Source: Hausera hauseri (Eukaryota). From it: 35,874 bases of DNA. Made by a program: the position numbers and the translations under genes. The notes beneath the pieces are model-generated. The model was not told where the DNA came from. It ran no database searches and was given only the letters and a program-made list of their open reading frames with translations. Below are positions 473 through 20,589 of the stretch, piece by piece. How positions within the stretch are numbered: the stretch's first letter is position 1; each line of letters begins with the position of its first letter. Location: contig JBJURY010555449.1 in assembly GCA_046269625.1 (NCBI GenBank), positions 1 through 35,874 of the forward strand, in the 5' to 3' direction.

Positions 473-3400
473 ATGTCAAGTAAAGTGAAGAATGCTGAAT
501 TCACGACTCGTGGGGTGACTCATGGTACGGCACGATGGGTAGATGCCGATGTCCAGGAAGTTCGGCCGAGTTTGGCGTATGCACAGACGGGTAAAAAAAC
601 GCCTGGTGTCGCAGGGTCGGTCGGTAAAAGAACGCATCAGACCGCAGGGTCACATGTGTCCAAAACCAAATCCACCTTGACCAAAAAGATTAAAAATGGT
701 TATGACGATGATGATCCGAGCCGTGTAACAGCGGATGGAAAAGGTGCTTGGCATTCGCCGTTGGAAGCCATGACGGATGCAGATGGTTACCGTTATGTGG
801 ATAGTGGGTTGATTGGAAAATCTTCTGCTGGTGTGGTCAATAAGACGGGGCATTCTGCCGAAGTGGGTCGTTCGGTATCCAAATCTGTCGGGGAGACAGT
901 CAGCTATGGTGATATATCCGCAGCTGCGGATTACGGTGCAGGGGGATATACAGGCAGTTCCAATACGGGGTCTGGTATATCAAGCCTGTTTGGAGCTGTT
1001 TCCAAAATACCGATGCCGGTAATGGTTTGGGGCGGAGGGCTGTTGGTATCAACCGGTATGTCGGTGAATGCCAACAGCAGTAGCAGCGATACTGCCACCA
1101 CAACTACTGGCGGGTCGACCAGTGCTACGCCAACCACCCAGACACAACTACCAGTCAAGGTGGCGGCAGGTCCTTTTACCGCCGGGGTGACTATTACTGC
1201 TTACAAGCCTGATGGGGTTACGGTGTTGGCTACGGGCACAATAGACTCCACCGGGAATGTTTCGCTGAATCTTGGTTCTTACACCGGGGCAGTGTTGTTA
1301 TCAGCAGTGGATAGCAATGGCGCTAGTACCAATTATGTGGATGAGACAACAGGCAAGCAGACAAATTTGGGATCAACGGTGTTGCGGTTGGCAGCAATGG
1401 TCAATTCAGGGACTAATGCTGCTGTCACGATTACGCCTTTGACGGAAATTGCCGTGCGGCAAATGGGCTTGTCGGTTGGCAGTAATAATCTGTCTAATGT
1501 TTCTGCATCGACCATAAGCAGTGTCAATACTTCAATTGCCAAATTGTTTCTGAACAATAATTCCGACGTAACCCGGTTGGAACCCAAGTTGACGGTGGAT
1601 GCAAGCGGCAATAGAACGGCCAGTACTGCTGATGCTTATGGCAAGGTGCTGGCTTTGTTGTCTGGTTATGGTGGCACAACACCCAGCGGGTCACAAAGTG
1701 CCAATGGTTTTGATGCCACGTTGACTGCATTAAACAATACCATTTCAACCTCGAATGGGGTATCCAGTATCAACAATCTCACCAGTTTTATTGGTGTGAT
1801 GAATCAGGGTCTTACCACCTACAATAAATCCAACACATCGTCTTCTCTGGTTGCAACAGATAAGGATATTGCTCCCGTTTTAGGGGTCGCGGCACCCACC
1901 TTGGCCTTGGGTACGGGGGTCAGTGATGGTGCAACATCACTCGAAGCGACCCAAGCTTCCGGAGTTTTAACGGCGACTGCGGTTTCTGGTACCGTATTGA
2001 CTGCAACCTTTACCAATAGCGCAAATGTTTCAGTCACCAAAACCGTTACATCATCTGGTGCAGCAGCGCCTGTTGTGTTGAGTACGGCTGATTTGACAAC
2101 ACTGGGAGACGGTACGATCAAGGCCTCTGTTACGGCCAGCAACTCCGGCTTGACCGGGTCTGCAACGACCACCAGCTTTGTCTTGGATACGGTTTCGCCA
2201 ACGGCTGTAATAACAACGAACAAAACATCATTTGCCTCAGCCACAGATTCGGCCGTGCTGACCTTTACTTTTAGTGAAGTGCCGGTTGGTTTTGATTTGA
2301 CCAAGGTGACTGTAGTGGGTGGCACTTTAACGTCGCCGTTAGCGGCCGCCACAGACAGTAAAATTTACATCTCAACATTTACGCCTACCTTAACGGGTAA
2401 GGAAACTCCCAGTGTTTCCATCAACGCGGGGGGGTACCAGGATGCTGCCGGAAATCTTGGATCGTCGGCACCGTCACCTGCGTTTACGACAACTAACTCT
2501 CCTACGGTGACCATTACCAGTAGCGCTTCCAAATTAAAGACAGGTGAAACGGCTATTATTACATTTACCTTTAGCGCTGCCCCTACCGGGTTCGATGCAA
2601 GCAAAGTGACCACAACAGGGGGGGATCTCAGCAATCTGTCTGTTAGCGCTGGTTCTACGGTCATTTACACTGCCACATTTACCCCCACGCAAAACAGTAC
2701 GACAGCCCCCAGCATTACCGTGGCCGCCAATAGTTACACCAATAGCAGCGGTTACGGCAATGCGGCCGGAGCAAGCCCGGTAATTGCCGTAGATACGCAA
2801 CCCCCCACCATGAGTATTGCAAGCAATATCACGAAGATCAATGGAATAAGTGGCAGCAATGTGGCTGTATTGACTTTCACGTTCAGTGAGGCTGTAACCG
2901 GGTTTGATGTCAGCAAACTCAGCGCCACGACCTCGGGTGGTGCCTCAGCGGGAACTTTTAGCAATTTTTCCCAGAATGCCACTAATGCCAAAATCTATAC
3001 GGCCACGTACACTCCATCCGCTAACATCAACAACGCGACCGTTTCAGTCACTGCGGCCGGGTCTTATACCGATGCTGCCGGGAACATCGGTTCAGCCCAG
3101 AGTCTGAGCCTGACCGTTGACAATGTAGCACCTGTTGCGCCAGCTGTGGGCCTGGGTACCAAGGTGAGTACGGGGGCAAATAGTGCCACAGCAACCCAGG
3201 CCAGTGGGGTAGTGACGGTTTCAACCGAGAGTGGTTCTTCGGTAAACGCTACCTTTATCAATAACACCAAGTCTGTGGTTAAAACGATAACAGGAGCAGT
3301 TGCTCCACAGCCCGTTATCTTGCAGGCCGCTGATCTCTCTGCGTTAGGAGATGGCAGCATTACCGTGCGTGTTGCAGCCACGGATGCCGCAGGTAATATT

Positions 3401-6400
3401 GGGGCATCCGCGTCCACCAGCTTTGTATTGGACACTGTAGCGCCAGTGGCACCTACGGTGGCGATGGGTAGTGGTATCAGCAATTCGGTTGTTGGTAGCA
3501 CCCAGGCCGTGCAGTCTTCCGGGGTTGTGACTGTAAATGCAGAAGCGGGTAGTACCGTGTTGGTAACTTTTAGTGGTAACGGTAAGAGTGTCACCAAACA
3601 ACTCACGGCAAATGGCAGTGCCCAGGGTGTTGTTTTGGCGAGTGGTGATCTGGCTGGCAGCACGGGTCTGGTTGATGGCCTGGTGACGGTGAGTGCCTCT
3701 GCAACAGATGCCGCAGGTAATATCAGCGCCGTTGGCTCCAGCTCTTTCACGCTTAAAACACAGCTTCCTCTGGCACCCGTGGTTGCATTGGGCACCGGGG
3801 TGAGTAATGGAGCCAACAGTGCCGAAGCTACACAGTCAAGTGGGGTAGTCACCGTGAATGCAGAAAGCTCGTCCAGCGTGCAGGTGACATTCTCCAATGG
3901 GAGCAAGACTGTCACCAAAACCTTGAACGGCACAGGGTCTGCACAAGCGGTTCCCTTGAATAGTGCTGATTTGACGGCGCTTGGTGATGGCTCTATTACT
4001 GTGACGGCCAAACAAACCGATGCAACAGGCAGCGCGTCTCCGGTGTCGTCTACAACATTTCTGCTGGATGCAACACCTCCTACTGCGGCGATCAGTGCCA
4101 GCCAGTATCTGGTGACCTCGGGGAATACTTCCACGATCACATTCAATTTTAGTGAGGCTGTAACCGGATTTAACAATAACTCTGTAACCGTTGCCGGTGG
4201 TACCCTGTCAACGATTACATCGGGCAGCAACAATACCTATACCGCTACTTTTACCGCAGACTCTTCTGCAACGGTACCGGCGATCAGTATTAACAACAAT
4301 GGGTATACAGATGCTGTTGGTAATCAGGGTGCTTCCGCTGTTTTGTATGGCGTTACCAAAGATTCCAATATCCCCAGAGTGACGATAACCAGTGACAAGA
4401 TGTCATTGCGATCCGGAGACACCGCAACGGTTACGTTTACATTCAGTCAGGCGGTTTCCGGTTTTGTATTGAATGACATCACGCTGGGTAACGGCACGGC
4501 TCAAATAACCAATCTTGCGGCAGTTTCCGGTAGCACAACGACCTATACGGCAACCTACACCCCTCCCACCAATTTTAATGGCCTTACCTCTGTTTCGGTG
4601 AGAGAGGCGAGTTATACCAATGCGGCGGGCACAGTGAATGGCTTGGCTGGGTCTTTAAGCAATCTGGCGATCAATACCATAGCGCCTCCTTCCCCCGTGC
4701 TGGCTTTGGGTGCAGGAGTAAGTGACGGAGCTACCAGTACTGAAGCAGTGCAGTCTGGCGGAGTTGTGACCGCATTGGGGAGTAGCGGTGCGACCGTGAC
4801 CGTGACGTTTGCCAATGGCAGCAAAACGGTGACTAAAACTCTCACCGGCAATGGTGCAGCGCAGGCTGTAACCTTGCTTGCCGGTGACTTGTCCACATTG
4901 ACGGATGGCCAAATTGCGGTAACAGCCACTACTCGGGATGCCGCAGGGAATCTCAGCAGCGTATCCAATATCAGCTTTACTTTGGATACCACGCCCCCAG
5001 GCAAGCCCACGATGGTGGTGAAGGCTGGGCAGGACGCGAATGTAAACGGCAGTGAAACCGGGGTAGATGTTGAAATATCTTCTACGGGCATGGTTGCTGG
5101 CGATAAGGTGCAGGTTAGCATGGGCGGGCAGAGTTTTGGTTCTGTTTACACCGTGACGTCGTCGGACGTGACAGCAGGCAAGGTGACCATGAATCTGGCC
5201 AAGAGCGCATTGGGTGCTGATGGCGTCAAGGCAATGACTGTGGTTGTTACCGATGCGGCCGGTAATGTCAGCACTGTCAGCGATACTTTGAACATTACAG
5301 TGGGTACCGCAGCGCCAGGCAAGCCCACGATGGTGGTGAAGGCTGGTCAGGATGCCTATGTAAACAGCAGTGAATCCGGGGTAGATGTTGAAATATCTTC
5401 CACGGGCATGACTGCTGGCGACAAGGTGCAGGTTAGCATGGGCGGGCAGAGTCTTGGTTCTGCTTACACCGTGACGTCGTCGGACGTGACAGCAGGCAAG
5501 GTGACCATGAATCTGGCCAAGAGCGCATTGGGTACTGATGGCGTCAAGGCAATGACTGTCGTTGTTACTAATGCGTCTGGTAGTTCCAGTACTGCCAGCG
5601 ATGCTTTGAACATTACAGTGGATACCACAGCGCCAGGCAAGCCCACGATGGTGGTGAAGACTGGGCAGGACGCGTATGTAAACAGCAGTGAAACCGGGGT
5701 AGATGTTGAAATATCTTCCACGGGCATGGTTGCTGGCGATAAGGTGCAGGTGAGAATGGGCGGGCAGAGTTTTGGTTCTGCTTACACCGTGACGTCGTCG
5801 GACGTGACAGCAGGCAAGGTGACCATGAATCTGGCCAAGAGCGACTTGGGTGCTGATGGTACCAAGTCAATGACTGTCGTTGTTACCGATGCGGCCGGTA
5901 ATTCCAGTACTGCCAGCGATGCTTTAACGCTGACTGTGGATCAAACATCACCAACCGTTACGATCACCAGTACGTCGGGAACTAAGCCTGACCTGACTGC
6001 TTCCGGCTCGACATCGCCGCTTACCTTCACTTTTTCTGAGGCTGTGACGGGGTTGGATACATCAAAATTTACGGCAGTTGGTGGAACCATTTCAGCACTA
6101 ACAGCGGTGAGTGGCAGCACAACCCAATATACGGCTACTTTTACCTCTAGTGGGTTCTCCTCTTCGGCAAGCAATACACCTCAGGTGGATGTGGCTGCGG
6201 GCGCCTTTAAAGATTTGGCCGGTAATTCCAACACGGCAACTGCCAAATTAAGTGGCGGCAGTGGCAAATTCACTGCAGGGCCTGCATTGGGGGGGATGGC
6301 CATCACAGTATATGGCGAGAAAGGCCAAGTGCTGGATCGCTCAGTGCTGGATGCCGATGGAAGATATAAGATTAATACAGGAGCTTATAGCGGTAAGGTA

Positions 6401-7192
6401 TTGGCAGTCCTGACAGATTTGAACGGATCTGCAGTTAATTATATGGATGAAGCCACCCTGCGTGGAAAAGACCTGGGGTCGGTTGTACTGCGTGCTGCGG
6501 GAGTCGTTGAAGCGGGTAAACCCTTTGTGCTCAATGTGACACCGCTCACGGAGCTGGCTGTGCGCAAGATGGGACTCAAGGCAGGGCAGATCAGCCTGAG
6601 CCAGGTAGATTCTGGTGATATTGTCAAGACAAATAAGGCAATTGCGCAGCTATTTTTAGGTGAAGATCAACAGATTACGCAGATTAAAGCTGATGCGGTA
6701 ATTAATAAGCAGGGTGAGAGCACCGTTGCTAACAAATACGGTCAGGTCTTGGCAACTCTGTCCGAGATGGACAAAATAAATCAGGGGAGTATGGAGACTA
6801 CTTTAAGTAAGCTATCGCATGAGATTACTCCGGACATGCTGAAGCATGCAGCTCAGCCTCCTGCTGGGCAAGCACCCAGCCCATTACAATTCTGCGCTGA
6901 CCACTCACCGAGCGCTCTTACAAAGGGCGCTGTGCCAACCCAGTCCAAGGCTGAGGCAGTGTTTGATGCCGCACATCTGGTTTCTTCTTTGGCTGGTGGT
7001 TTGGCAGCTTATCACCACGCTGCACCACAGAAAAATGTTGACGTTGTGCGCGTTGCATCGAATTTTAATCCCCATGATTTGTTGTTAGCCAATGATGAGG
7101 CAGGTCTTGGTAATGCTCTGCAGTATCTGGCAACCAGTATGGTGCAAGTAGGTGACGGGCATGAGCATCAGAACAAGGTTATTTTGGGTTAA
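473..7192 (+). CDS. Giant repetitive surface protein / adhesin, ~2239 aa, ~14 bacterial Ig-like domains flanked by N- and C-terminal copies of a 'TPLTE' domain
   Basis: Uninterrupted ORF. The track starts at GTG 464, but ATG 473 has AAGGGG (459-464) 8 nt upstream. Repeats of ~100 aa: 'DT..P...TFTFSE.V.GF...YTATFTP...Y.D.AGN' (Big_12-like) and 'P.LALG.GVSDGA.S.EA.Q.SGVVTV...LGDG.I.V...TDAAGN' (Ca-stabilised BIg-like). S/T/G/A/V-rich; one Cys. Confidence 0.93.
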   Translation: MSSKVKNAEFTTRGVTHGTARWVDADVQEVRPSLAYAQTGKKTPGVAGSVGKRTHQTAGSHVSKTKSTLTKKIKNGYDDDDPSRVTADGKGAWHSPLEAMTDADGYRYVDSGLIGKSSAGVVNKTGHSAEVGRSVSKSVGETVSYGDISAAADYGAGGYTGSSNTGSGISSLFGAVSKIPMPVMVWGGGLLVSTGMSVNANSSSSDTATTTTGGSTSATPTTQTQLPVKVAAGPFTAGVTITAYKPDGVTVLATGTIDSTGNVSLNLGSYTGAVLLSAVDSNGASTNYVDETTGKQTNLGSTVLRLAAMVNSGTNAAVTITPLTEIAVRQMGLSVGSNNLSNVSASTISSVNTSIAKLFLNNNSDVTRLEPKLTVDASGNRTASTADAYGKVLALLSGYGGTTPSGSQSANGFDATLTALNNTISTSNGVSSINNLTSFIGVMNQGLTTYNKSNTSSSLVATDKDIAPVLGVAAPTLALGTGVSDGATSLEATQASGVLTATAVSGTVLTATFTNSANVSVTKTVTSSGAAAPVVLSTADLTTLGDGTIKASVTASNSGLTGSATTTSFVLDTVSPTAVITTNKTSFASATDSAVLTFTFSEVPVGFDLTKVTVVGGTLTSPLAAATDSKIYISTFTPTLTGKETPSVSINAGGYQDAAGNLGSSAPSPAFTTTNSPTVTITSSASKLKTGETAIITFTFSAAPTGFDASKVTTTGGDLSNLSVSAGSTVIYTATFTPTQNSTTAPSITVAANSYTNSSGYGNAAGASPVIAVDTQPPTMSIASNITKINGISGSNVAVLTFTFSEAVTGFDVSKLSATTSGGASAGTFSNFSQNATNAKIYTATYTPSANINNATVSVTAAGSYTDAAGNIGSAQSLSLTVDNVAPVAPAVGLGTKVSTGANSATATQASGVVTVSTESGSSVNATFINNTKSVVKTITGAVAPQPVILQAADLSALGDGSITVRVAATDAAGNIGASASTSFVLDTVAPVAPTVAMGSGISNSVVGSTQAVQSSGVVTVNAEAGSTVLVTFSGNGKSVTKQLTANGSAQGVVLASGDLAGSTGLVDGLVTVSASATDAAGNISAVGSSSFTLKTQLPLAPVVALGTGVSNGANSAEATQSSGVVTVNAESSSSVQVTFSNGSKTVTKTLNGTGSAQAVPLNSADLTALGDGSITVTAKQTDATGSASPVSSTTFLLDATPPTAAISASQYLVTSGNTSTITFNFSEAVTGFNNNSVTVAGGTLSTITSGSNNTYTATFTADSSATVPAISINNNGYTDAVGNQGASAVLYGVTKDSNIPRVTITSDKMSLRSGDTATVTFTFSQAVSGFVLNDITLGNGTAQITNLAAVSGSTTTYTATYTPPTNFNGLTSVSVREASYTNAAGTVNGLAGSLSNLAINTIAPPSPVLALGAGVSDGATSTEAVQSGGVVTALGSSGATVTVTFANGSKTVTKTLTGNGAAQAVTLLAGDLSTLTDGQIAVTATTRDAAGNLSSVSNISFTLDTTPPGKPTMVVKAGQDANVNGSETGVDVEISSTGMVAGDKVQVSMGGQSFGSVYTVTSSDVTAGKVTMNLAKSALGADGVKAMTVVVTDAAGNVSTVSDTLNITVGTAAPGKPTMVVKAGQDAYVNSSESGVDVEISSTGMTAGDKVQVSMGGQSLGSAYTVTSSDVTAGKVTMNLAKSALGTDGVKAMTVVVTNASGSSSTASDALNITVDTTAPGKPTMVVKTGQDAYVNSSETGVDVEISSTGMVAGDKVQVRMGGQSFGSAYTVTSSDVTAGKVTMNLAKSDLGADGTKSMTVVVTDAAGNSSTASDALTLTVDQTSPTVTITSTSGTKPDLTASGSTSPLTFTFSEAVTGLDTSKFTAVGGTISALTAVSGSTTQYTATFTSSGFSSSASNTPQVDVAAGAFKDLAGNSNTATAKLSGGSGKFTAGPALGGMAITVYGEKGQVLDRSVLDADGRYKINTGAYSGKVLAVLTDLNGSAVNYMDEATLRGKDLGSVVLRAAGVVEAGKPFVLNVTPLTELAVRKMGLKAGQISLSQVDSGDIVKTNKAIAQLFLGEDQQITQIKADAVINKQGESTVANKYGQVLATLSEMDKINQGSMETTLSKLSHEITPDMLKHAAQPPAGQAPSPLQFCADHSPSALTKGAVPTQSKAEAVFDAAHLVSSLAGGLAAYHHAAPQKNVDVVRVASNFNPHDLLLANDEAGLGNALQYLATSMVQVGDGHEHQNKVILG
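1145..1888 (+). other. N-terminal copy of the ~240-aa bookend ('TPLTE') domain in gene 1
   Basis: AAGPFTAG..YKPDG..GSYTGAVLL..DSNG..NYVDETT..LGSTVLR..ITPLTEIAVRQMGL..IAKLFL..YGKVLALLSG..NQGLTTYN; boundaries approximate. Confidence 0.8.
4997..5926 (+). repeat. Three near-identical tandem 318-bp (106-aa) Ig-like units
   Basis: Units start with CCAGGCAAGCCCACGATGGTGGTGAAG at 4997, 5315 and 5633 (period exactly 318). A core of ~60 nt is identical in all three. Confidence 0.95.
6263..7189 (+). other. C-terminal copy of the bookend domain in gene 1 plus short tail
   Basis: TAGPALGG..YGEKG..GAYSGKVL..DLNG..NYMDEATL..DLGSVVLR..VTPLTELAVRKMGL..IAQLFL..YGQVLATLS..GGLAAYH; collinear with 1145-1888. 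Confidence 0.85.
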
Positions 7193-7317
7193 AGCCTTGT
7201 ATTCCGGCTCTGTACAGGGAGAGGGATGCATGAAGGGGCTATATGCCTGTGAAGGGAGGATGTTCGGATTGAAGGGGACGTAATTTGACGGTACAGCAAT
7301 ATCAGGTTTAAGTGGAC

Positions 7318-13300: not shown

Positions 13301-16300
13301 GGGTAGTGTTGGTAACGGCCGATAATAACAGCGCGGTGGCCGTGACATTCAGCCGGGGAAGCAACAAGGTGGTTAAAACGCTAACGGCGAATGGCAGTGC
13401 CCAGGCAGTCAGTCTGGATTCAGCCAGCGTACTGTTGTTGGGCGACGGTACGATCACGGTTACGGCGACGGCTACCGATGGGGCGGGCAATGTGAGTAAT
13501 CCGCAGACTCAATCGTTCGTGCTGGATACCCAGGCACCATCATCGCCCAGTTTGACACTGGGTAATGGTGTCGCTGATGGCGTGACCAGCAGTGAGGCGG
13601 TGCAAACCAGTGGTGTTGTGTTGGTGAACGCCGAGGCTGCTGCCAAGGTGCAGGTAACGTTTAGCAGCGGTTCCAAAACCGTAGTGAAAACGATTACGGC
13701 AACGGGTTCTGCCCAACCAGTAACCTTAACAGCATCCGATCTGGGTGGCACTGCCGGATTGCCTGATGGAGAAGTGACGGTGCAAGCCACAGCGACAGAC
13801 GTGGCCGGCAATGTGGGGTCTACGGCAGTTACCCGTTTTACGCTGGATACTGTCGCACCCGTCGCGCCGACCCTGGCACTGGGGTCTGGTGTGAGTAATG
13901 GTGCAAACAGTGCAACGGCCACGCAGGCCAGCGGTGTGGTCACCGTAAATGCCGAAGAGAACAGCACGGTGTTGTTGACCTTTACCCGTAGCGGAGGCAC
14001 GGCCGTGAACAAAACCGTCACCAGTACGGGTACCATGCAGGGCGTTACGCTGACCGCAGCCGATCTTACCGCGTTGGGCGGAGATGGTTCGATTACAGTC
14101 AGTGCGACGGCAAGAGATATGGCCGGCAATCTGAATTCTGCCGCTGTAGGGTCAACCACTTTTGTTCTGGATACCCAGGCACCAACCGCCTCTATTGTTT
14201 CGGCCACGGCCGGGAATGTGCAGGTGAGCAGCAGCGAGATAGGCACGGCCTATCTGGTGAATAGCAATGTGGTAGTCAACTCGGTGTCTTCTATTACCAG
14301 TGCGCCGGGAACACACTGGAAATCGGTTACCATTTCTGCGGCCAATACCAATACGACTTTTCCGGTTTCTGGCCTGCTGGATGGTTCATATAAACTTTAC
14401 AGCCGGGATCTGGCTGGCAACCTCTCGCAGCCGACACAGAAGCTGGTAACAATAGATAACACCTCCCCGACGGTGACCATTGCCAGTAATAAATCTCTGG
14501 TGGTTCCCAATAGCAGCGCCGTGATCACTTTTACGTTCAGTGAGCCGGTTTCTGGGTTCAATACCAGCAGCATTACCGTGAAGTCTGGCACGCTGACCAA
14601 CCTGGCATCGGTGGGACAGGCGATTGACGGGAGTTACTACACTGCTTATACCGCCACATTTACTACAGTGGCCGCTCCGACCGAGGCATTAAGCGTATCG
14701 GTTACCGCTGGCAGCTATGCAGACAGTCATGGCAACTCTGGGCTGAAAGGTGATTCTCCGGCGCTTTACTATGACAGTACTGCACCCACGGTCACCATCA
14801 CCAGTAATAAAAGCGCACTCAAGGCCGGAGAAACGGCGCTGATTACTTTTACATTCAGTCAGGTTGTCACAGACTTTACCGATACGGATATCACAGTCAC
14901 CGGGGGTACGCTGGGAGCGTTATCCGGCAGTGGCATCAACTACACGGCAACTTTTACGCCAAGTGTCAATTACAGCGCCGCGTCAACCGTGAGTGTGACG
15001 GCAGGCAGTTACAGTGCCGCGAGCAAATCAGGCGCTGCGGGGACACTGAAGCTCCAGGTAGATACAGTCGTGCCGGATGCTCCCACCTTGACGTTGGGTG
15101 CCGGTGTGGCAGATGGAGCAACCAGCAGCGAAGCCGTACAAAGTGGTGGTGTCATGACGGTGGTGGGTGAAAGTGCAGCAACGATCAAGGTAACGTTTAG
15201 TCGTGCTGCCCAGAGCGTGAGCAAAACCCTGACGGCAAATGGTTCCAGCCAGCCCGTTGTCTTGGCGGCTGGTGATCTGACCACGTTGGGTGATGGCACG
15301 ATAACAGTACAGGCTACGGTCACAGATCCGTCTGGCAATGTCAGCACATCAACAGCCACCAATTTTGTGCTGGATACCGCAGCGCCTGCCACTCCTGTGC
15401 TGGCGTTAGGTACGAACATAGCCGGCGGGGCAACCAGCAGTGAGGCTGTGCAAAGCAGTGGCGTGGTGACGGTATCTGCAGAAAGTGGCGCCAAGGTGCT
15501 GGCTACGTTCAGTAACGGGAGCAAGCTGGTGACCAAAACCTTGCAGGGCAGCGGTTCGGTACAGGCCATCACCCTGTCGGCTGCTGATCTCATCACCCTG
15601 ACCGATGGGACGATCAATGTACAGGTAGTGGTACAGGATATGGCCGGAAACGCCAGCAATGCCAGCACCACTTTTAATCTGATGACGACACCTCCTGCTG
15701 CGCCGGTACTGGCGCTGGGTAGTGGTGTCAGTACTGGAGCCACAGCAGGCAAGGCCACGCAAGATAGTGGCGTGGTTACTGTTTCATCGGCCAGTGGCAA
15801 CGTGGTGAATACCACGTTCAGCAAGGGGGGAAATACGGTCATCAAGTCGGTAACAGCCAATGGCAGTGCACAGGCGGTCACTTTGACCAGCGCCAATCTG
15901 ACTGCCCTTGGCGGAGATGGCACGATTACGGTGAGTGCTGCCGCCACTGACCCTGCCGGAAACGTCGGCAGTTCGGTGACCAGCAGTTTTGTGTTGGACA
16001 CGGTTGCGCCTGTATCGCCCGTATTGGCATTGGGCACCGGGGTGTCTGATGGTGCCACCAGTTCGGAAGCAACCCAGGAGAGTGGTGTGATAACGGTGAA
16101 TGCCGAATATTTGTCCAGTGTGGTATTGACCTTCAGCCGGGTGGGTGGTGGCTCTGTTACCCAGACGATTTCCGGTACAGGGTCAGCAAAAGCAGTGACT
16201 TTAAGTGCTGCCGACTTGGTCACCCTGGGGGATGGCACGATAGCCGTATCGGCAACGGCAACCGATATTGCCGGTAACGTTAGCCAGGTTGCCAATACGT

Positions 16301-19300
16301 CATTTGTGCTGGATACCACAGTCCCAACGGCTCCTGTGTTGAGCCTGGGAAGCGGGGTCAATTCCATGGTTAATGCAGCCAAGGCGACGCAATCGAGTGG
16401 GGTGATTACCGTCACGGCTGAATCTGGTGGGGCGATTCTGGTGACTTTCGCTCGCAGTGGCGGAGGAAAGGTGACCAAGTCACTGACCGGTACCGGCTCT
16501 ACCCAATCAGTGGTTCTGACGGCGGGTGACCTGAGTACCCTGGGGGATGGTTTGGTGGTGGTGAACAGCAGCGTTAGTGATGCGTCCGGTAATATCAGCC
16601 TGGTTTCGAGTACCAAATTTACCTTGAGCACAGTTGCCCCGGCTACCCCGGTTCTGGCGCTCGGGTCTGGGGTATCTGACGGTGCAACCAGCAGTGAAGC
16701 CGTACAAGCTGATGGTGTGGTGACTGTCAATGCGGTACAGATGGCCCAGGTGTCTGTGGTGTTTTCCCGCAGTGGCGGCGGCAGTATCACCAAAACGGTA
16801 ACGGGTACTGGTGCAGCACAAGCGGTTACCCTGACGGCTTCTGATTTGAGTACATTGGGTGATGGGCAGATTGCCGTCAGTGCCACGGCAACTGATGCAG
16901 CCGATAATGTCAGCAAGAGTGCTACAACCGGGTTTGTGCTGGATACTGTGTCGCCCAGTCAACCGAGTCTTACTCTGGCGAGCGGGGTGGGCACGGGGGC
17001 TTCCAGCGCCGAAGCTGTGAGCAGTTCCGGTGTAGCGCTGATCAGTGGAGAATCAGGGTCAACCTTGCTGGTGACGTTTACTAACGGATTGCGTGCGGTG
17101 ACCAAGAAACTGGTGGCTACTGGCAGTACCCAGCCTGTAGTGCTGTCTGCCTCCGATCTGGTGGATCTAACAGACGGAACTATCAGTGTGAGCGTAGTTG
17201 CAAAAGATAGTGCCGGGAATACAAGCCCGGCGGCCAGTACCAGTTTCTTGCTGGATACTGCTCCCCCCAGCGCACCCTCGTTCATTTTGTCCTCAGCGGC
17301 CAGTAATGGGGCCAGCAGTGCCGTGGCCACACAGACTTCCGGGATACTGACCGTCAGTGCAGAAAGTGGTTCGACCATACAGGTGACTTTTGCTCGCAGT
17401 GGTGGGGGGAGTGTGTCACGAACGGTGACCGGAACGGGCTATTCCCAAGCCGTGACGCTCACGACATCAGACTTGACCACGCTGGGAGATGGCACCATTC
17501 TGGTGCAGGCCACAGCAACTGACGTTGTGGGTAACGTGAGCCAGGTCGCCAACACCTCATTTGTGCTGGATACGGTAGCGCCAGCGGCTCCCGTTCTGGC
17601 GTTGGGCACTGGGATTGCGAATGGTGCAACCAGTAGCGAAGCCGTGCAGTCCAGTGGGGTGGTGACTGTGTCGGCTGAAAACAACAGCCGGGTGATGGTG
17701 CGTTTTGTGCGCGGGTTGTCCAGTGTGATCAAGCTGTTGGATGGCAGCGCCACAACCACCGCAGTCACGCTGGATAGCAATGATCTGGCGACGCTGGGTG
17801 ATGGCTCCATTACCGTGAAGGCCATTGTAACGGACGCAGCCGGCAATACCAGCGAGGCCTCAACCACTTCGTTTGTGCTGGATACGGTAGCGCCCAGTAC
17901 GCCGACTATAGTGCTGGGCACCGGTGTGAGCACTGGGGCCACATTGAACGAACTCACGCAGGCAAGTGGTGTGGTGAAGGTATCGGGGGGGGCTGGCGGG
18001 CAGATACAGGTGACATTTTCCAGAGCAGGTGGTGGGCAGGTCGTGAAAACGCTGGTGAGTACGGGCAGCACGCAGGGGGTGATTCTGGAGTCGAGCGATG
18101 CTACAACCTTGGGGGATGGCTTGATTAGCGTGACTGCCTCTGTGCAGGATGCTGCAGGTAATCTGAGTGCTTTAGCTACGACCAGCTTTACGCTGGATAC
18201 GGTTGCGCCCAATGCACCCCAGATTGCATTGGGTGCCGGGGTCGATGCTGGTGCTTCCAGCGCCAAAGCCACTCAAGCCAGTGGGGTAGTCACCGTTAAT
18301 GCCGGGACCGGGACCACCGTGAGCGTTACGTTTTCCAATACCTTCAACAGCATCACCAGAACGGTCATCAAAACGGTGACCGGCACCGGTAGTGACCAGC
18401 CGGTGGTGTTGACGACAGCAGACATCGACAGCAATACCGCTGGCTTATGGAACGGACTGGTATCGGTCAAGAGTACCGCCGCAGATGCTGCGGGTAATGT
18501 CAGTGCGGTTAGCAGTAGCAGCTTTACCCTGAATACCGGCACGCCGACTACGCCCCAGATTGCATTGGGCACCGGGGTAGCTAATGGTGCTACACGCAGT
18601 GAAGCCACACAGGCATCTGGTGTGGTGACTTTAACCGCACAAGACGGTACACAAACCAGTGTGACTTTTGCGCGGCTCAATGGTGGTCAGGTGGTTAAAA
18701 CCCTGACGGGTACCAATAAATCACAAGCCGTTACGCTGACGGATGCTGAAGTGACGGCATTGGGAGATGGTACGATACGGGTGAGCGTTATCAGTCAGGA
18801 TACCAGCGGTAATCAGAGCGCATCTGTAGCAACCAATTTTATATTGGACACTGTGCCCCCCGACAATGCTGTGCTGACTCTGGGTACCGGGGTGGCCGAT
18901 ACAGCAAACCGTGCTGAGGCACTCCAGTCGAGTGGGGTGGTCACGGTGAATGGTGAAAGTGGTGCCAGCATCCTGGCCACTTTTACCGGGGTGAAAGGGG
19001 TGGTCAACAAAACCTTGACCGGTACAGGCAAGGCTCAGGCGGTGGTGCTGGTTGCTGCCGATCTCGCGACATTGGGAGACGGTAACGTCACGGTGGCGAC
19101 AACCGTGAAAGACCCTGCCGGGAACCTGAGTGGCACACCTGCCTCGACTACCCAGTTTACGTTGTCTGCCACCTTGCCATCGGCACCGGTTCTGGCGCTG
19201 GGTAGTGGTGTTTCTGATGGAGCAACCAGTGGAGAGGCCACACAAGCCAGCGGGGTAGTGACGGTCAATGGTAACAGTGGGCTGGATTTTCAGGTGACTT

Positions 19301-20589
19301 TTACCAATAGCTCGGGGGTGACGGTGATCAAGCAAATCACCGGTACGGGCAGTGCACAGCCCGTGGTATTGACTTCATCCGACGTGAGCAAGCTGAACAA
19401 CGGTTCCATTACCGTAACCACTCAGGTCACCGACAATGCGGGCAATAATGGCACTTCCTCTGTCAGCTTTGTGCTGGATACGGTAACACCCATTCCAACT
19501 ATTTCCAGTGGGCGGCAAGATTTGTCGGCCTCCGGGGCAACCGATGTGGTGTGGTTAAAGTTTGCGGAGCAGGTGCTGAATTTTGACATAGGTGATCTGA
19601 CAGCGGTCGGGGGGACACTTTCCGGGTTTGGTCAGCAGGCGGGTACCAATAATTATTTTGTGACTTTTACCTCATCCGGTGCCAGCAGTCAGGAAGTCCG
19701 GGTAGCCGGTGGGACTGGCTCCTATCAGGATTTGGCCGGCAATGTTCCGCCTGTGCAAGTGTCTCTGACCGGCAATGGCCGGTTTTCGGCCGGACCTGCT
19801 TTGGGAGGCATGATGGTGACGGTGTATGACGAGCATGGGGTGGTTCTGGATCGATCCCTGCTCGATGAACATGGGCGTTATGACATTCATACCGGCAGTT
19901 ATGTAGGCAAGGTGCTGTTGACGTTGACGGATACCAATGGCTCAGCGGTCAATTATCTGGATGAAGCTACTTTGCAGGGTAAAGACCTGGGCAATATGGT
20001 ATTGCGTGCAGCCAGTGTTGTTCGCCCTGGGGAGACACTGGTTGCCAACATTACGCCACTGACAGAACTGGCGGTGCGCGAGGCAGGCTTGTCTGCTGGC
20101 GTAACCGATTTGACGGGTATTTCGGCCCAGGATATTGCCCGTGCCAATGCGGCTACTGCCTGGATATTTCTGGGTGCAATGTCTGACATTACCCGGATGG
20201 ATGCCCGCCTTGTCGTGGATACCTTGGCGCGCCCGGTGGCCGGCGCAAATTCATACGGACAGATTCTGGCCATGCTGTCAGGTATGGATCAGGCACACCA
20301 TGGAGATATGGAAGCGACCCTGAAGCAGTTGAGTGAAATGATGGGTGCTGACGGGTTGTCTGGGAATGCCACACGTGATCCAGCCAAACTGGTGGGCATG
20401 ATTGCAGAAGGATTGGATGCGTATAACGCAGTGGCAAAGCAGCATGGTATGGCCGTGATTTCGCACCAGGTCATAGACGAATTCATAACAAGAGAGACTG
20501 AATGGCATGCGTTGCTGCATGCGATAGATGTTGGGCGAGAAGCAATGCTGACTTCTGTGTACCAGTCGGCATATGGGGTATTGAGTTGA
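7318..20589 (+). CDS. Giant repetitive surface protein / adhesin, ~4423 aa, ~36 Ig-like domains flanked by N- and C-terminal 'TPLTE' domains; paralog of gene 1
   Basis: Uninterrupted 13.3-kb ORF. Start is GTG 7312 or ATG 7318, neither with a strong SD. Same repeat classes as gene 1, including a run of 14 'ALG.GV.DGATS.EA.Q.SGVVTV' domains at ~15070-19485. No Cys seen. Confidence 0.93.
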   Translation: MSDHTGRLSVSHKKEERYAKRTDILLKKSKVAKRGYLPYPEHEVYEAQVVIQELKPAEHDQIPRKLYSQESNQSVASTSQMRPSPEEGFISALGQPTTGVVTTGQFASGYETETTIFGLSRDDLGYIGEFDPVQSSIGLAVWVGMIAAGQIAMAMSGSDSSSAMPAASVTNVTSNTVTAMLGQGPFIGGVLVKVYKVDGSLLTSGVIDSNGKVVLDVGSYNGAVLLVATDDNGTASNYMDEATLTAKDLGNTILRAATVVNVGNTLVYMTVLTELAVRKMGLTSPQSTSLSAVPASSITETNTAIAQLFLNKSADISSVAPNMVVSPTGADNSANANEYGRLLAILSGYDATTASGATAPRGTLTTLNTLETLTSVTNGVANTTDMAQLVDMVNQGLQQFNTSKLQAISQTDPLVTRLLKLSAPQLALGAGVSDGATSSEAVQSTGVVTVNAVSGALLNITLSNGNKTVTKSVTGTGSAAPVVLAASDLDTLGNGTITVRAVAGNTTLQGAATETSFVLDTVAPTVVISSNKQTLLGSTDTTVVTFTFSEPPSKFTQSSVTVSGGQITSPQVLASDAKVYTATLTPDSGSSTSTVSIVAGSYTDAAGNPGGAGAALSWGVIAPPVVTMALGTGVADGATSSEAVQASGVVTVSGNNGGTLTASFVRGSTTLTRTLTANGSAQPLTLDAADLTQLGDGVVSVSATVKDSYGNVSPVTSTTFVLDTVSPVIPTLSLINASLINRVSALSSNGIFTVTSENTSNTNVTLERNGAIVVKSLTGTGSAQPVVLTDADLAVLGNGTVTVSVSSKDAAGNVSNASSGNFVLNAAVPAKPALSLASGYDNWISMDKAGTSLAVVTTGMQAGDRLQLKLSGSDFGTAYTLTQADVTAGKVTLAVAKNTLGSDGIKAFSVVTVDVAGNISPPSDTLDVTLDTQPPTITTTTTVVMSSGSVMIQSSEPVTAYLLSSGFTANSVANITASPSSQWKSAIISTANSPTALNVTGLSEGVYKMYAVDNAGNFASASQTVTIDGKVPTLLITSSKALIPPNDNAVITFAFSENVTGFDLTDVQLNSGSGTLSNFQGSGAQYTATFTMAATPTQIPTITVAKGSYTDLAGNPGEAGVTPVLSYDSTLPRVSITSNVSAVKAGGTALVTFWFSGTTTNFDSSDITVVGGTVTGFTGSADFYTATFVPSANSNLTASISVAANSYTVADRPGIAGLANITVQTQIPNAPSLTLGTGVADGATFAEATQSGGVLLGFATNGTIMTTYTRTGVTPLVKQVTASGASQPLVLTASEVAALGDGLISVSSRVVDAIGNSSAAVETSFNLDTQPPVAPILALGSGVSVGATLGKATQTSGVISVVAESGSTWVVSFKNGTTTINKTLVGTGDVQSVVLTSADVGGSSGLADGNISVSAVTTDAAGNVSQTATTSFMLDTQAPGQPTLQIKAGQSATLNNATRSVDVEIAGTGLMAGGKVQLKLADADFGRAYTVTSADVTAGKVSLNIVKAELGADGVKALSAVLSDMAGNVSVASSVLNLTVTTVTPDKPILAIPAGQNTYFGLNKTSMNLEVTGSNIFVGNQIQLQLAGTNLGAAYTVTANDVAAGKITMSVARSILGSDGIKSVTARVIDTAQNMSAASDPVKLVVDTVAPAQPVLALKAGQSGYVNAASSGMNIDLTNSGLSDGDRIQMKLGGVNIGTVYVVTTPDVAAGKVTINVPKSALGADGNKAITAVITDLAGNVGVESAALNLVLDTVAPNAASLALGNNVNASGVNGNRAVQSSGVVTVSGESGATAWVTFFRSGGGTVTKSVSVTGTGQPQGVVLQSSDVSTLGDGTVLVSTTLVDAAGNTSMSVSTSFWMETNAPNAPVVALGSGVSSGASSSKATQTTGVVTVMADVGSTINVTFTRAGGGRVDKTLTANGSVQAVVLNTSDLATLGEGSIAVSATATSQSGNVSGSSSTGFVLDVTPPSSPLITLGTGVSDGVTASKAVQVSGVVLVTADNNSAVAVTFSRGSNKVVKTLTANGSAQAVSLDSASVLLLGDGTITVTATATDGAGNVSNPQTQSFVLDTQAPSSPSLTLGNGVADGVTSSEAVQTSGVVLVNAEAAAKVQVTFSSGSKTVVKTITATGSAQPVTLTASDLGGTAGLPDGEVTVQATATDVAGNVGSTAVTRFTLDTVAPVAPTLALGSGVSNGANSATATQASGVVTVNAEENSTVLLTFTRSGGTAVNKTVTSTGTMQGVTLTAADLTALGGDGSITVSATARDMAGNLNSAAVGSTTFVLDTQAPTASIVSATAGNVQVSSSEIGTAYLVNSNVVVNSVSSITSAPGTHWKSVTISAANTNTTFPVSGLLDGSYKLYSRDLAGNLSQPTQKLVTIDNTSPTVTIASNKSLVVPNSSAVITFTFSEPVSGFNTSSITVKSGTLTNLASVGQAIDGSYYTAYTATFTTVAAPTEALSVSVTAGSYADSHGNSGLKGDSPALYYDSTAPTVTITSNKSALKAGETALITFTFSQVVTDFTDTDITVTGGTLGALSGSGINYTATFTPSVNYSAASTVSVTAGSYSAASKSGAAGTLKLQVDTVVPDAPTLTLGAGVADGATSSEAVQSGGVMTVVGESAATIKVTFSRAAQSVSKTLTANGSSQPVVLAAGDLTTLGDGTITVQATVTDPSGNVSTSTATNFVLDTAAPATPVLALGTNIAGGATSSEAVQSSGVVTVSAESGAKVLATFSNGSKLVTKTLQGSGSVQAITLSAADLITLTDGTINVQVVVQDMAGNASNASTTFNLMTTPPAAPVLALGSGVSTGATAGKATQDSGVVTVSSASGNVVNTTFSKGGNTVIKSVTANGSAQAVTLTSANLTALGGDGTITVSAAATDPAGNVGSSVTSSFVLDTVAPVSPVLALGTGVSDGATSSEATQESGVITVNAEYLSSVVLTFSRVGGGSVTQTISGTGSAKAVTLSAADLVTLGDGTIAVSATATDIAGNVSQVANTSFVLDTTVPTAPVLSLGSGVNSMVNAAKATQSSGVITVTAESGGAILVTFARSGGGKVTKSLTGTGSTQSVVLTAGDLSTLGDGLVVVNSSVSDASGNISLVSSTKFTLSTVAPATPVLALGSGVSDGATSSEAVQADGVVTVNAVQMAQVSVVFSRSGGGSITKTVTGTGAAQAVTLTASDLSTLGDGQIAVSATATDAADNVSKSATTGFVLDTVSPSQPSLTLASGVGTGASSAEAVSSSGVALISGESGSTLLVTFTNGLRAVTKKLVATGSTQPVVLSASDLVDLTDGTISVSVVAKDSAGNTSPAASTSFLLDTAPPSAPSFILSSAASNGASSAVATQTSGILTVSAESGSTIQVTFARSGGGSVSRTVTGTGYSQAVTLTTSDLTTLGDGTILVQATATDVVGNVSQVANTSFVLDTVAPAAPVLALGTGIANGATSSEAVQSSGVVTVSAENNSRVMVRFVRGLSSVIKLLDGSATTTAVTLDSNDLATLGDGSITVKAIVTDAAGNTSEASTTSFVLDTVAPSTPTIVLGTGVSTGATLNELTQASGVVKVSGGAGGQIQVTFSRAGGGQVVKTLVSTGSTQGVILESSDATTLGDGLISVTASVQDAAGNLSALATTSFTLDTVAPNAPQIALGAGVDAGASSAKATQASGVVTVNAGTGTTVSVTFSNTFNSITRTVIKTVTGTGSDQPVVLTTADIDSNTAGLWNGLVSVKSTAADAAGNVSAVSSSSFTLNTGTPTTPQIALGTGVANGATRSEATQASGVVTLTAQDGTQTSVTFARLNGGQVVKTLTGTNKSQAVTLTDAEVTALGDGTIRVSVISQDTSGNQSASVATNFILDTVPPDNAVLTLGTGVADTANRAEALQSSGVVTVNGESGASILATFTGVKGVVNKTLTGTGKAQAVVLVAADLATLGDGNVTVATTVKDPAGNLSGTPASTTQFTLSATLPSAPVLALGSGVSDGATSGEATQASGVVTVNGNSGLDFQVTFTNSSGVTVIKQITGTGSAQPVVLTSSDVSKLNNGSITVTTQVTDNAGNNGTSSVSFVLDTVTPIPTISSGRQDLSASGATDVVWLKFAEQVLNFDIGDLTAVGGTLSGFGQQAGTNNYFVTFTSSGASSQEVRVAGGTGSYQDLAGNVPPVQVSLTGNGRFSAGPALGGMMVTVYDEHGVVLDRSLLDEHGRYDIHTGSYVGKVLLTLTDTNGSAVNYLDEATLQGKDLGNMVLRAASVVRPGETLVANITPLTELAVREAGLSAGVTDLTGISAQDIARANAATAWIFLGAMSDITRMDARLVVDTLARPVAGANSYGQILAMLSGMDQAHHGDMEATLKQLSEMMGADGLSGNATRDPAKLVGMIAEGLDAYNAVAKQHGMAVISHQVIDEFITRETEWHALLHAIDVGREAMLTSVYQSAYGVLS
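7843..8580 (+). other. N-terminal copy of the bookend domain in gene 2
   Basis: GQGPFIGG..YKVDG..GSYNGAVLL..DDNG..NYMDEATL..DLGNTILR..TVLTELAVRKMGL..IAQLFL..YGRLLAILSG..NQGLQQFN. Confidence 0.8.
15073..19485 (+). repeat. Tandem run of 14 diverged ~104-aa Ig-like repeats in gene 2
   Basis: Period mostly ~309-318 nt (one ~336). Each unit ends in 'F.LDT..P' or a variant; protein-level similarity is obvious, DNA is diverged. Confidence 0.85.
19771..20586 (+). other. C-terminal copy of the bookend domain in gene 2 plus short tail
   Basis: SAGPALGG..YDEHG..GSYVGKVLL..DTNG..NYLDEATL..DLGNMVLR..ITPLTELAVREAGL..YGQILAMLSG..EGLDAYN. Confidence 0.85.

What the first reader, a model, noticed from the sequence alone, without database searches (positions are those of the whole stretch)
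1145..20586. Bookend architecture: the same ~240-aa domain caps both ends of the Ig stalk
Five copies of one non-repeat domain are visible: N-terminal at 1145, 7843 and 21231, C-terminal at 6263 and 19771. Conserved motifs are GP, Y..(D)G, G.Y.G..L, NY.DE, LG...LR, T.LTE.A.R..GL, FL, YG..LA.LS and G...Y/F. It reads as a beta sandwich followed by a helical subdomain. In known giant adhesins the two ends differ (anchor versus ligand-binding/RTX). The two C copies are closest to each other, so the arrangement predates the gene duplication and has been kept. Inference: a homotypic docking or oligomerisation module that could link proteins head-to-tail into longer fibres or bridge cells. This is the best candidate here for an undescribed system.
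Basis: partly seen in the sequence, partly recalled or inferred. Interest (0 to 1): 0.85.

Follow-up and report, generated by a model that had tools for sequence, protein, structure and literature searches.

The report
Same end-domain on giant adhesins
Three tandem giant bacterial surface-fibre genes carry the same uncatalogued ~180–270-residue domain near the start, and two of them carry it again just before the end; the domain is real and conserved, folds like the non-heme domain of the Geobacter cytochrome PgcA, and normally sits at the cell-surface base of such proteins, but nothing here shows that the two ends dock to each other.

Summary
The fold guess also holds: an AlphaFold2 model (pLDDT 96) shows a transthyretin-like beta-sandwich followed by a helical subdomain.

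The domain matches no Pfam or NCBIfam model, but it is not an orphan. About 994 cluster representatives carry it. In nearly all it is a single copy 150–400 residues from the N-terminus, after a Gly/Ala-rich hydrophobic linker in giant Ig-repeat proteins. In small Geobacter-type lipoproteins it follows the lipobox directly.

Six relatives have type I secretion genes (ABC, HlyD, TolC-like) within 10 kb. The only solved structure covering the whole domain is the non-heme domain of PgcA (Z 10.8), whose function is unknown.

The C-terminal copies form one clade, so they predate the paralog duplications. They evolve more slowly than the N copies. Other lineages duplicated the domain independently, often to internal positions.

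My best reading is an outer-membrane-proximal base module, reused here at the distal tip just before the secretion signal. Homotypic docking remains untested.

Two sibling notes from this scan cover the same DNA. I rate this a new variant of a known kind, of moderate interest.

The parts
473..7192 (+). Gene 1. Giant Ig-repeat surface protein of about 2239 aa from the ATG at 473, with an N copy and a C copy of the domain.
   Evidence: Open frame 449-7189. ATG with an upstream aaagggg. Big_12 at 1e-94, plus Big_13 and Ca_tandemer. No GGxGxD motif.
992..1048 (+). Gene 1 Gly-rich hydrophobic segment preceding the N copy. It may be a channel- or membrane-spanning linker.
   Evidence: Maximum Kyte-Doolittle 19-mer score 1.27 at aa 182. 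An equivalent segment lies upstream of the domain in 82% of 147 homologs, with a median gap of 23 aa.
1160..1684 (+). Gene 1 N-proximal copy, core. The extended profile match is 1148-1954.
   Evidence: HMM i-E 2e-79. Profile positions 2-274 matched.
6269..6787 (+). Gene 1 C-terminal copy, core. The extended match is 6257-7153.
   Evidence: HMM i-E 6e-84. Member of the C-type clade.
6788..7189 (+). Gene 1 C-terminal tail: a helical extension plus a putative type I secretion signal, ending ...NKVILG.
   Evidence: The ending resembles the C22229 protein (...HKMILG) and T1SS-linked relatives (...VIVGG...VIFG...ILYG). The signal function is inferred.
7318..20589 (+). Gene 2. Giant Ig-repeat surface protein of about 4423 aa, with an N copy and a C copy.
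   Evidence: Open frame 7312-20586. Big_12, Big_13, Ca_tandemer and OmpL47-type barrels. No RTX motif.
7726..7782 (+). Gene 2 hydrophobic Gly/Ala-rich segment (IGLAVWVGMIAAGQIAMAM).
   Evidence: Kyte-Doolittle score 1.83, the highest in the protein.
7861..8382 (+). Gene 2 N-proximal copy, core. The extended match is 7846-8649.
   Evidence: HMM i-E 1.5e-81.
19783..20304 (+). Gene 2 C-terminal copy, core. The extended match is 19771-20571. This is the copy that was modelled.
   Evidence: HMM i-E 5e-86. AF2 pLDDT 96.1. VIA Z 10.8 to 9i0e_A.
20305..20586 (+). Gene 2 C-terminal tail, ending ...AYGVLS.
   Evidence: Translation. No family match.
20652..35874 (+). Gene 3. It is truncated by the contig end, with at least 5074 aa present. 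Only the N copy is present in the window.
   Evidence: The frame is open from 20640 to 35873. It holds a single copy. Its last ~900 aa are 50-56% identical to repeats in the protein of contig C22229, which ends with a degenerate C copy.
21249..21773 (+). Gene 3 N-proximal copy, core. The extended match is 21237-22061.
   Evidence: HMM i-E 2.4e-78.

Best explanation
What is shown. The three genes are paralogous giant fibrillar surface proteins built from Big_12, Big_13 and Ca_tandemer Ig-like extenders. The repeated unit belongs to a widespread domain family that no catalogue models. It is a transthyretin-like beta-sandwich packed against a four-helix subdomain, and it shares that fold with the non-heme domain of Geobacter PgcA. 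Across the family, the domain's ancestral and dominant position is the first folded domain after the envelope tether. In giant proteins the tether is an N-terminal head plus a Gly/Ala-rich hydrophobic linker. In small lipoproteins it is a lipobox cysteine plus a short linker. Relatives of the giant proteins sit beside type I secretion genes. In this organism's lineage the domain was copied once, without the linker, to the C-terminal end. That copy lies 95-135 residues before the stop. It was then inherited through at least three paralog duplications and is more constrained than the N copy.

What is inferred. The proteins leave through a type I system, C-terminus first, and stay tethered by their N-terminal part. 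The N copy then sits directly on the outer-membrane surface as a base or pedestal module that contacts the cell's own envelope or the secretion pore. The C copy presents that same binding surface at the distal tip of the fibre. If so, the tip would recognise the envelope of sister cells, or the base region of other fibres, giving cell-to-cell or fibre-to-cell attachment. That mechanism does not require strict N-to-C homotypic docking.
For: Five copies and their conservation.

Fold: (pLDDT 96.1). PgcA is the only whole-domain structural match. VIA gives Z 10.8, rmsd 3.0 A over 143 residues, with the next hit at Z 6.1. Foldseek puts 9i0d first, with 183 aligned columns and TM 0.53.

No catalogue model: no Pfam or NCBIfam family matches the domain.

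Family size and position: 994 representatives at E <= 1e-3. In almost all of the 150 listed, the best match lies at residues ~130-400. In 82% of 147 homologs a hydrophobic G/A-rich segment lies a median of 23 aa upstream.

Lipoprotein context: 395-440-aa Geobacter and Geomonas proteins carry LAGC- or VAGC-type lipoboxes directly before the domain and have no CxxCH motif.

Type I secretion: ABC, HlyD and OEP genes lie immediately beside the giant gene in L014, L015, L021, L029, L035 and L038. g1 and the C22229 protein end ...ILG, like the T1SS-linked relatives that end ...IVGG...IFG and ...ILYG.

C-copy history: the C copies form one clade (98-99) inside a clade holding all copies from this organism. 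dN between C copies is 0.34-0.40, against 0.48-0.53 between N copies, with dS saturated. The C copy lacks the hydrophobic linker.

The constant domain paired with variable C-terminal cargo, both in lipoproteins and in giant proteins, fits an anchoring or pedestal role better than a target-specific one.
Against: No binding partner of any kind has been shown. The envelope-binding idea is inference from position alone.

The contig ends 448 bp upstream of g1 and inside g3, so no secretion genes can be linked to these genes.

No retention module and no RTX beta-roll is detectable. The secretion route itself is therefore inferred from relatives.

In the closest relatives (Aurantiacibacter, L014 and L015), about 170 residues of Ig-like sequence separate the hydrophobic segment from the domain. 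The domain is therefore not always the first domain.

Internal copies in P0001, P0006 and P0020 show the domain can work far from either end.

The function of the PgcA domain is unknown in the papers I could read. The published 'secretion domain' label rests on a lipobox deletion, not on the fold.
Confidence: 0.4

Rival explanations
1. Secretion ratchet and stopper. The domain is a fast-folding extracellular unit. The C copy occupies the slot just before the secretion signal, where RTX adhesins have their beta-roll. It folds first outside the cell and prevents backsliding. The N copy folds last, just outside the pore, and locks the fibre in place against the N-terminal head.
For: g1 and g2 have no GGxGxD repeat and no HemolysinCabind match. 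The C copy lies 95-135 residues from the stop. In canonical RTX adhesins, folding of the beta-roll is thought to prevent reversal of secretion. The N copy follows the putative channel-spanning linker.
Against: Most family members secrete with only the N copy and have other C-terminal domains. The Limnohabitans lacus protein (L032) has both RTX motifs and a C copy. Internal copies and the lipoprotein context are not explained. Calcium dependence has not been tested.
Confidence: 0.2
2. One reading: a homotypic docking or oligomerisation module. N and C copies, or C and C copies, bind each other and link proteins head-to-tail into longer fibres or bridge cells.
For: The same domain is at both ends and is retained through paralog duplication under purifying selection. 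Transthyretin-like sandwiches can oligomerise through sheet edges (general knowledge). Bookend arrangements recur elsewhere, in P0002/L046, P0026 and L032.
Against: Most family members have only one copy. Extra copies in other lineages are internal. N and C copies have diverged into distinct types that are only 37-44% identical, rather than co-evolving pairwise. C copies cluster with each other and not with the next gene's N copy. No direct evidence of interaction exists.
Confidence: 0.1
3. A binding module for an external ligand, such as a glycan, mineral or host surface, that happens to be usable anywhere along the fibre.
For: The beta-sandwich resembles carbohydrate-binding-like and CnaB/SdrD-type adhesin domains at Z 4-6. 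Several polar positions are nearly invariant (D64, E65, T98, E99, R103, N126, Y162 in A2), which could form a pocket. PgcA acts on metal oxides. Internal and tip copies fit a ligand-binding role.
Against: Ligand-binding domains of fibrillar adhesins are normally at the distal end. This family's dominant position is next to the envelope tether. The same domain heads lipoproteins with very different C-terminal parts.
Confidence: 0.15
4. A structural spacer with no specific binding function. The C copy would be a retained by-product of a recombination event between repeats or paralogs.
For: Giant repeat proteins shuffle modules readily. The C copy of the C22229 protein has lost the NY.DE segment and sits on a very long branch, so the copy can decay.
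Against: In g1, g2 and C703327 the C copies keep all family-invariant residues and evolve more slowly than the N copies. Independent duplications occurred in at least four other lineages.
Confidence: 0.1

Closest known systems
Non-heme N-terminal domain of Geobacter sulfurreducens PgcA (PDB 9i0d, 9i0e; called the 'secretion domain' in PMC10570954)
   Same: The two-part fold is the same: a transthyretin-like beta-sandwich followed by a helical subdomain, aligned over essentially the whole domain. VIA gives Z 10.8 and rmsd 3.0 A over 143 residues. Foldseek aligns 183 columns at TM 0.5. Both sit directly after the envelope tether of a surface or extracellular protein. Sequence homologs of the window's domain occupy the same post-lipobox position in Geobacter and Geomonas lipoproteins.
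   Different: Sequence identity is 13-18%, and profile searches of PDB sequences give no hit. PgcA is a small lipoprotein with three heme domains on Pro-Thr tethers. The window's proteins are multi-thousand-residue Ig-repeat fibres without lipobox or hemes, and they carry a second copy at the C-terminus. The function of the PgcA domain is itself unknown.
LapA/MpIBP-type RTX fibrillar adhesins exported by type I secretion
   Same: Both are giant proteins made of tandem Ig-like extenders, including Ca_tandemer-type repeats. Both have an N-terminal head followed by a flexible Gly-rich segment. Relatives are encoded next to ABC, HlyD and TolC-like genes. The overall logic is a base at the cell and a tip at the far end.
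   Different: No retention-module family matches the N-termini. g1 and g2 have no RTX beta-roll. The position before the secretion signal is filled by a second copy of the base domain, so the two ends are alike rather than different.
Transthyretin-like, CarboxypepD_reg, CnaB and SdrD-B beta-sandwich domains
   Same: The first ~95 residues superpose on these domains at Z 4.8-5.8. The first hairpin gives sub-threshold Pfam matches to Big_6, SdrD_B and bMG3, and a PDB SdrD match at E 0.005 over 30 residues.
   Different: Those domains lack the fused helical subdomain and the invariant NY.DE and TPLTE.A.R motifs. All the matches fall below family thresholds.

Membership tests
RTX (LapA-like) type I secreted fibrillar adhesin | N-terminal retention module | tested here: not met
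   Pfam gives no match on the three N-terminal regions. NCBIfam on whole g1 and g2 gives no retention-module model. Some homologs have a beta-rich head, with a weak HCBP_related match at E 0.005. g1-g3 instead have charged, low-complexity heads.
RTX (LapA-like) type I secreted fibrillar adhesin | Flexible linker able to span the secretion channel | tested here: inconclusive
   Gly/Ala-rich hydrophobic segments lie at g1 aa 182-200, g2 aa 139-157 and g3 aa ~151-170, with Kyte-Doolittle scores of 1.3-1.8. The feature is conserved across homologs. It could equally be a transmembrane helix.
RTX (LapA-like) type I secreted fibrillar adhesin | Tandem Ig-like extender domains | tested here: met
   Big_12 at 1e-94 and 5e-84, Big_13 at 9e-52, and Ca_tandemer at 2e-45.
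RTX (LapA-like) type I secreted fibrillar adhesin | C-terminal RTX nonapeptide beta-roll before the secretion signal | tested here: not met
   g1 and g2 contain no GGxGxD motif and no HemolysinCabind match. The C-terminus of g3 is missing from the window.
RTX (LapA-like) type I secreted fibrillar adhesin | Adjacent ABC transporter, membrane-fusion protein and TolC-like gene | not testable with these tools
   The contig holds only the three giant genes. The trio is present in six relatives' loci. Only short ABC fragments on unlinked contigs of the same assembly were found.
PgcA non-heme domain fold | Transthyretin-like sandwich fused to a helical subdomain, superposable over the full length | tested here: met
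   9i0e_A at Z 10.8, rmsd 3.0 A, 143 residues, model range 8-190, with the next hit at Z 6.1. 9i0d is the top Foldseek hit.
PgcA non-heme domain fold | Detectable sequence homology to PgcA | tested here: not met
   Profiles A1 and A2 searched against PDB sequences return no PgcA hit up to E 10. Identity in the structural alignment is 13-18%.
PgcA non-heme domain fold | Position directly after a lipoprotein lipobox | tested here: not met
   This does not hold for the window's proteins, which have no lipobox. It does hold for the Geobacter, Geomonas and Nitrospirota sequence homologs.
   The single complex prediction gave no verdict and counts neither way.

The most novel reading that the evidence does not exclude
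The domain is a self-recognition module. The tip copy of one fibre binds the base copy of fibres on the same or neighbouring cells, or the envelope patch the base copy occupies. A family of paralogous giant proteins could then assemble head-to-tail or bridge cells. This would be a kin-type adhesion code that does not use the usual RTX tip domains. A related novel reading is that the C copy replaces the RTX beta-roll as the first-out folding ratchet of a type I substrate.
Probability: 0.12. Interest if true: 0.8.

Novelty: new variant of a known kind. Interest (0 to 1): 0.5.

Why it matters
Giant fibrillar adhesins are usually described as polar. They have a retention module at the cell end, and ligand-binding domains plus a beta-roll at the far end. 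Here a paralog family has neither canonical end. It uses one domain at both ends, and that domain belongs to a family of roughly a thousand sequence clusters with no Pfam or NCBIfam model.

The same fold heads surface lipoproteins, including PgcA. The non-heme domain of PgcA has been crystallised, but none of the papers I could read explains its function.

A function found for either context would therefore annotate both. It could define a general module for the first domain outside the outer membrane. If the tip copy does recognise the cell's own surface, that would be a simple mechanism for bacterial self-aggregation.

A practical outcome is a new profile (alignment A2) that marks the base of many unannotated giant surface proteins.

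Tried and rejected
- **Complex prediction.** I ran the g2 N copy with the g2 C copy. The result was no verdict (ipSAE 0.00-0.01, my alignments were not used). I report it here only; it is not evidence either way.
- **The look-up of encoding contigs.** I took gene neighbourhoods from genome-contig loci instead.
- **Catalogue searches.** Pfam and NCBIfam gave only sub-threshold hits on the five copies. They gave nothing on the N-terminal heads and nothing relevant on the relatives' C-terminal domains.
- **Sequence link to PgcA.** None was found. The Geobacteraceae paralogs I scanned lacked CxxCH, so they are not PgcA orthologs. In one search my frame choice may have been wrong for loci on the minus strand.
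- **LapG-type cleavage site.** The [TAP]AA[GV] motif is enriched upstream of the domain (44 of 146, against 11 of 118 control windows). The Ala/Gly-rich composition could explain this, so I make no claim.
- **dN/dS.** dS is saturated, either not computable or about 2. Only the ranking of dN values and an approximate omega of <= 0.2-0.3 can be stated.
- **Linking secretion genes in the same assembly.** Only short ABC fragments on unlinked contigs turned up.
- **Expression.** The single public run holding this DNA is probably the source assembly, and there is no RNA run.
- **ESM Atlas.** It returned only unnamed clusters.
- **Careful tree.** The careful search did not finish, so I used the quick IQ-TREE and FastTree trees.
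- **Gap in contig C703327.** The N stretch was left as it is and read as X.
Full report
**1. What is in the window**

The 35,874-base window is one entire contig (C555449) of an 868-Mb assembly in 909,086 contigs. It is bacterial in character and consists almost wholly of three + strand giant genes.
- g1 occupies the open frame 449-7189, with its ATG at 473.
- g2 occupies 7312-20586, with its ATG at 7318.
- g3 starts at 20640, with its ATG at 20652. It runs off the contig end after 5078 codons.

The stalks are made of Big_12, Big_13 and Ca_tandemer Ig-like repeats, with OmpL47-type barrels in g2. Neither g1 nor g2 contains a single GGxGxD motif.

**2.

BLASTP of the g2 C-terminal copy finds four other copies at E 1e-38 to 1e-63, and nothing else below 1e-3.

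A 174-position core HMM places the copies as follows, with no further copy anywhere in the three proteins:

| Copy | Core coordinates |
|---|---|
| g1 N | 1160-1684 |
| g1 C | 6269-6787 |
| g2 N | 7861-8382 |
| g2 C | 19783-20304 |
| g3 N | 21249-21773 |

A longer 275-position profile is matched end to end by all five. The unit is therefore about 175 well-conserved residues plus a looser helical extension of about 90 residues.

The C copies end 135 (g1) and 95 (g2) residues before the stop codon.

**3. Fold**

With only the five copies as the alignment, AlphaFold2 was confident for the first ~170 residues only.

With a 57-sequence alignment (A2), the g2 C copy reaches pLDDT 96.1 and pTM 0.91. 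It shows a beta-sandwich (strands to residue ~95) followed by four helices.

In the exhaustive VIA search, the wild-type non-heme domain of Geobacter PgcA (9i0e_A) is the only hit above Z 8. It scores Z 10.8 with rmsd 3.0 A over 143 residues, spanning model residues 8-190. Every following hit (Z <= 6.1) covers only the sandwich: transthyretins, carboxypeptidase regulatory domains, and CnaB or SdrD B domains.

Foldseek ranks the PgcA mutant structure 9i0d first in both runs, the second time with 183 aligned columns.

The link is at fold level only. Profiles A1 and A2 find no PgcA sequence in the PDB.

In the papers I could read, the PgcA domain has no demonstrated function:
- It is described as a non-heme domain that is cleaved off (PMC11520253).
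- It is also called a 'secretion domain' (PMC10570954).
- The cited genetic evidence is a deletion in the lipobox, not in the fold (bioRxiv 10.1101/2022.08.12.503762).

**4. The family and where the domain normally sits**

No Pfam or NCBIfam model matches the domain.

A profile search of 1.84 billion cluster representatives gives 994 proteins at E <= 1e-3, and 469 at E <= 1e-10. In nearly all of the 150 best, the match begins 130-400 residues from the N-terminus and is the only copy.

In 82% of 147 of these proteins, a Gly/Ala-rich hydrophobic segment lies a median of 23 residues upstream of the domain. The heads before that segment are of two kinds:
- a beta-rich head, with a weak HCBP_related-like motif;
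- an acidic or basic low-complexity head, as in g1-g3 and in the closest relatives from Aurantiacibacter.

Genome contigs place the family across many groups: Alpha-, Beta- and Gammaproteobacteria, Thermodesulfobacteriota, Nitrospirota, and a PVC-group bacterium.

In Geobacter, Geomonas, Nitrospirota and Desulfobacterales, the domain instead follows a lipobox directly. These are 395-810-residue proteins with unrelated C-terminal parts and no heme motifs. Each of five Geobacteraceae genomes holds two to six such matches.

The common denominator is therefore the first folded domain after an envelope tether.

**5. Secretion route**

In six loci from unrelated genera, an ABC transporter, a HlyD-type membrane-fusion protein and, in four of the six, a TolC-like OEP protein lie within 10 kb of the giant gene, in most cases directly beside it. 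The six are Aurantiacibacter (two loci), Limnohabitans, a Pseudomonadales MAG, an unclassified proteobacterial MAG and Gallionella.

In many other loci the 10-kb flanks are filled by further giant genes, so absence there says little.

The extreme C-termini of g1 (...NKVILG) and of the C22229 protein (...HKMILG) resemble those of the T1SS-linked relatives (...VIVGG...VIFG...ILYG).

Type I export of g1-g3 is therefore a reasonable inference, but it is not shown. The contig carries no neighbouring genes, and the assembly yielded only unlinked ABC fragments.

Measured against the published minimal definition of an RTX adhesin (retention domain, channel-spanning linker, Ig extenders, beta-roll plus signal), g1 and g2 meet the extender criterion. 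They have a candidate linker. [quoted passage not shown]

**6. History of the copies**

The same assembly holds more members.
- Contig C703327 encodes a shorter paralog with both an N and a C copy. It contains an assembly gap, which I left untouched.
- Contig C22229 is filled by a 7497-codon open frame. That frame ends with a diverged C copy in which the NY.DE segment is deleted.

In a quick maximum-likelihood tree, all eight copies from this organism form one clade (support 87), next to Aurantiacibacter. Within that clade the four C copies group together (98), as do the g1, g2 and g3 N copies (96). A second tree with other multi-copy proteins gives the same picture.

Selection can only be bounded, because dS is saturated. 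The C copies nonetheless differ less than the N copies of the same gene pairs: dN is 0.40 against 0.48 for g1/g2, and 0.34-0.37 for pairs with C703327. The refutation criterion of relaxed selection on the C copies is therefore not met. The degenerate C22229 copy is the exception.

The C copies cluster with each other and not with the following gene's N copy. This argues against the sibling note's 'neighbour code'.

**7. Is the bookend arrangement general?**

Only partly. About 10 of the 150 best representatives have more than one full copy. A last copy within ~150 residues of the C-terminus occurs in these proteins:
- P0002/L046, from a PVC-group bacterium of Bugula;
- P0026;
- Limnohabitans lacus L032, which also has RTX motifs.

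In P0001, P0006, P0020, P0004 and P0008 the extra copies are internal. The tree shows that these duplications arose independently in at least four lineages.

Recurrent duplication suggests that extra copies are useful. It also shows that the domain is not intrinsically a terminal cap.

**8. Mechanism**

My best reading (confidence about 0.4) is that the domain is an outer-membrane-proximal base or pedestal module. It would contact the cell's own envelope or the secretion pore. In this lineage the same surface has been placed at the distal tip, immediately before the secretion signal, so the tip can engage sister-cell envelopes or the bases of other fibres.

The shown steps are the architecture, the fold, the position statistics, the secretion-gene linkage in relatives, and the duplication history and constraint. 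The inferred steps are the secretion route of these particular genes, the topology, and any binding.

The rivals are:
- a secretion ratchet and stopper that substitutes for the missing beta-roll (0.2);
- an external-ligand module (0.15);
- a functionless spacer (0.1).

**9. The sixth copy**

The last ~900 residues of g3 are 50-56% identical to the repeats that fill the first ~3200 residues of the C22229 protein. The stalks of g1 and g2 show no such similarity. At the DNA level, short stretches reach 87-94% identity, but there is no clean end-to-end overlap.

C22229 is therefore probably the 3' part of gene 3, or else a very close paralog. If it is the 3' part, gene 3 would exceed 12,000 codons and would end in a degenerate sixth copy.

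**10. Limits**

- The complex prediction returned no verdict.
- No RNA data exist for this DNA.
- The careful tree search did not finish, so support values come from quick methods.

Noticed in passing
G000 contig C22229 (loci L011-L013), minus strand 23609-1119: A 7497-codon open frame fills the whole contig. Its first ~3200 residues share 50-56% identity with the last ~900 residues of gene 3. It ends with a degenerate C-type copy in which the NY.DE segment is deleted, and its tail is ...HKMILG. It is probably the missing 3' part of gene 3, or a close paralog. Upstream of the copy there is a sub-threshold F5/8 type C (discoidin-like) match and an Asp-rich segment that looks calcium-binding.
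   Followed up: partly
G000 contig C703327 (L010), + strand 569-4165: A shorter paralog (frame of at most 1199 aa, with an N gap inside the repeats) has both an N copy and a C-type copy. The C copy breaks off into unrelated sequence 35 nt before the contig end, so its apparent stop may be an assembly artefact.
   Followed up: partly
window 449-1150, 7312-7850, 20640-21240: The N-terminal heads of the three proteins are charged and of low complexity, with no family match. They are followed by a Gly/Ala-rich hydrophobic segment; in g2 it is the most hydrophobic 19-mer of the protein. Many homologs share this 'head, ALGALGGG..AAAGGGG-like segment, domain' layout, with either a beta-rich or an acidic head. 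This may be a retention device different from the LapA-type retention module.
   Followed up: partly
L072 (Photobacterium galatheae), L030 (Thauera sinica), L037 and L048 (Betaproteobacteria MAGs): Tandem arrays of two or more domain-bearing genes are common in other genomes as well. Photobacterium has two adjacent ~1020-aa proteins, each with two copies of the domain.
   Followed up: no
L014, L015, L038, L039, L045 (C-terminal ~150 aa); L024, L026, L027: Single-copy relatives share an uncatalogued non-RTX C-terminal domain with a 'DDLIYIDN'-like or 'GSDD..IVG'-like motif just before the C-terminus. It has no NCBIfam match and may be another unmodelled type I secretion C-terminal domain.
   Followed up: partly
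window 6263-21995 (sibling note s1-844269): The proposed 'neighbour code' holds that each C copy resembles the next gene's N copy. The copy tree does not support it: C copies group with C copies and N copies with N copies.
   Followed up: partly
window as a whole: This bacterial contig sits in an 868-Mb, 909,086-contig assembly. Only one public run holds it. It presumably comes from a bacterium associated with, or contaminating, the sequenced sample. Its taxon could not be fixed; the closest domain relatives are from Aurantiacibacter at ~40% identity.
   Followed up: partly
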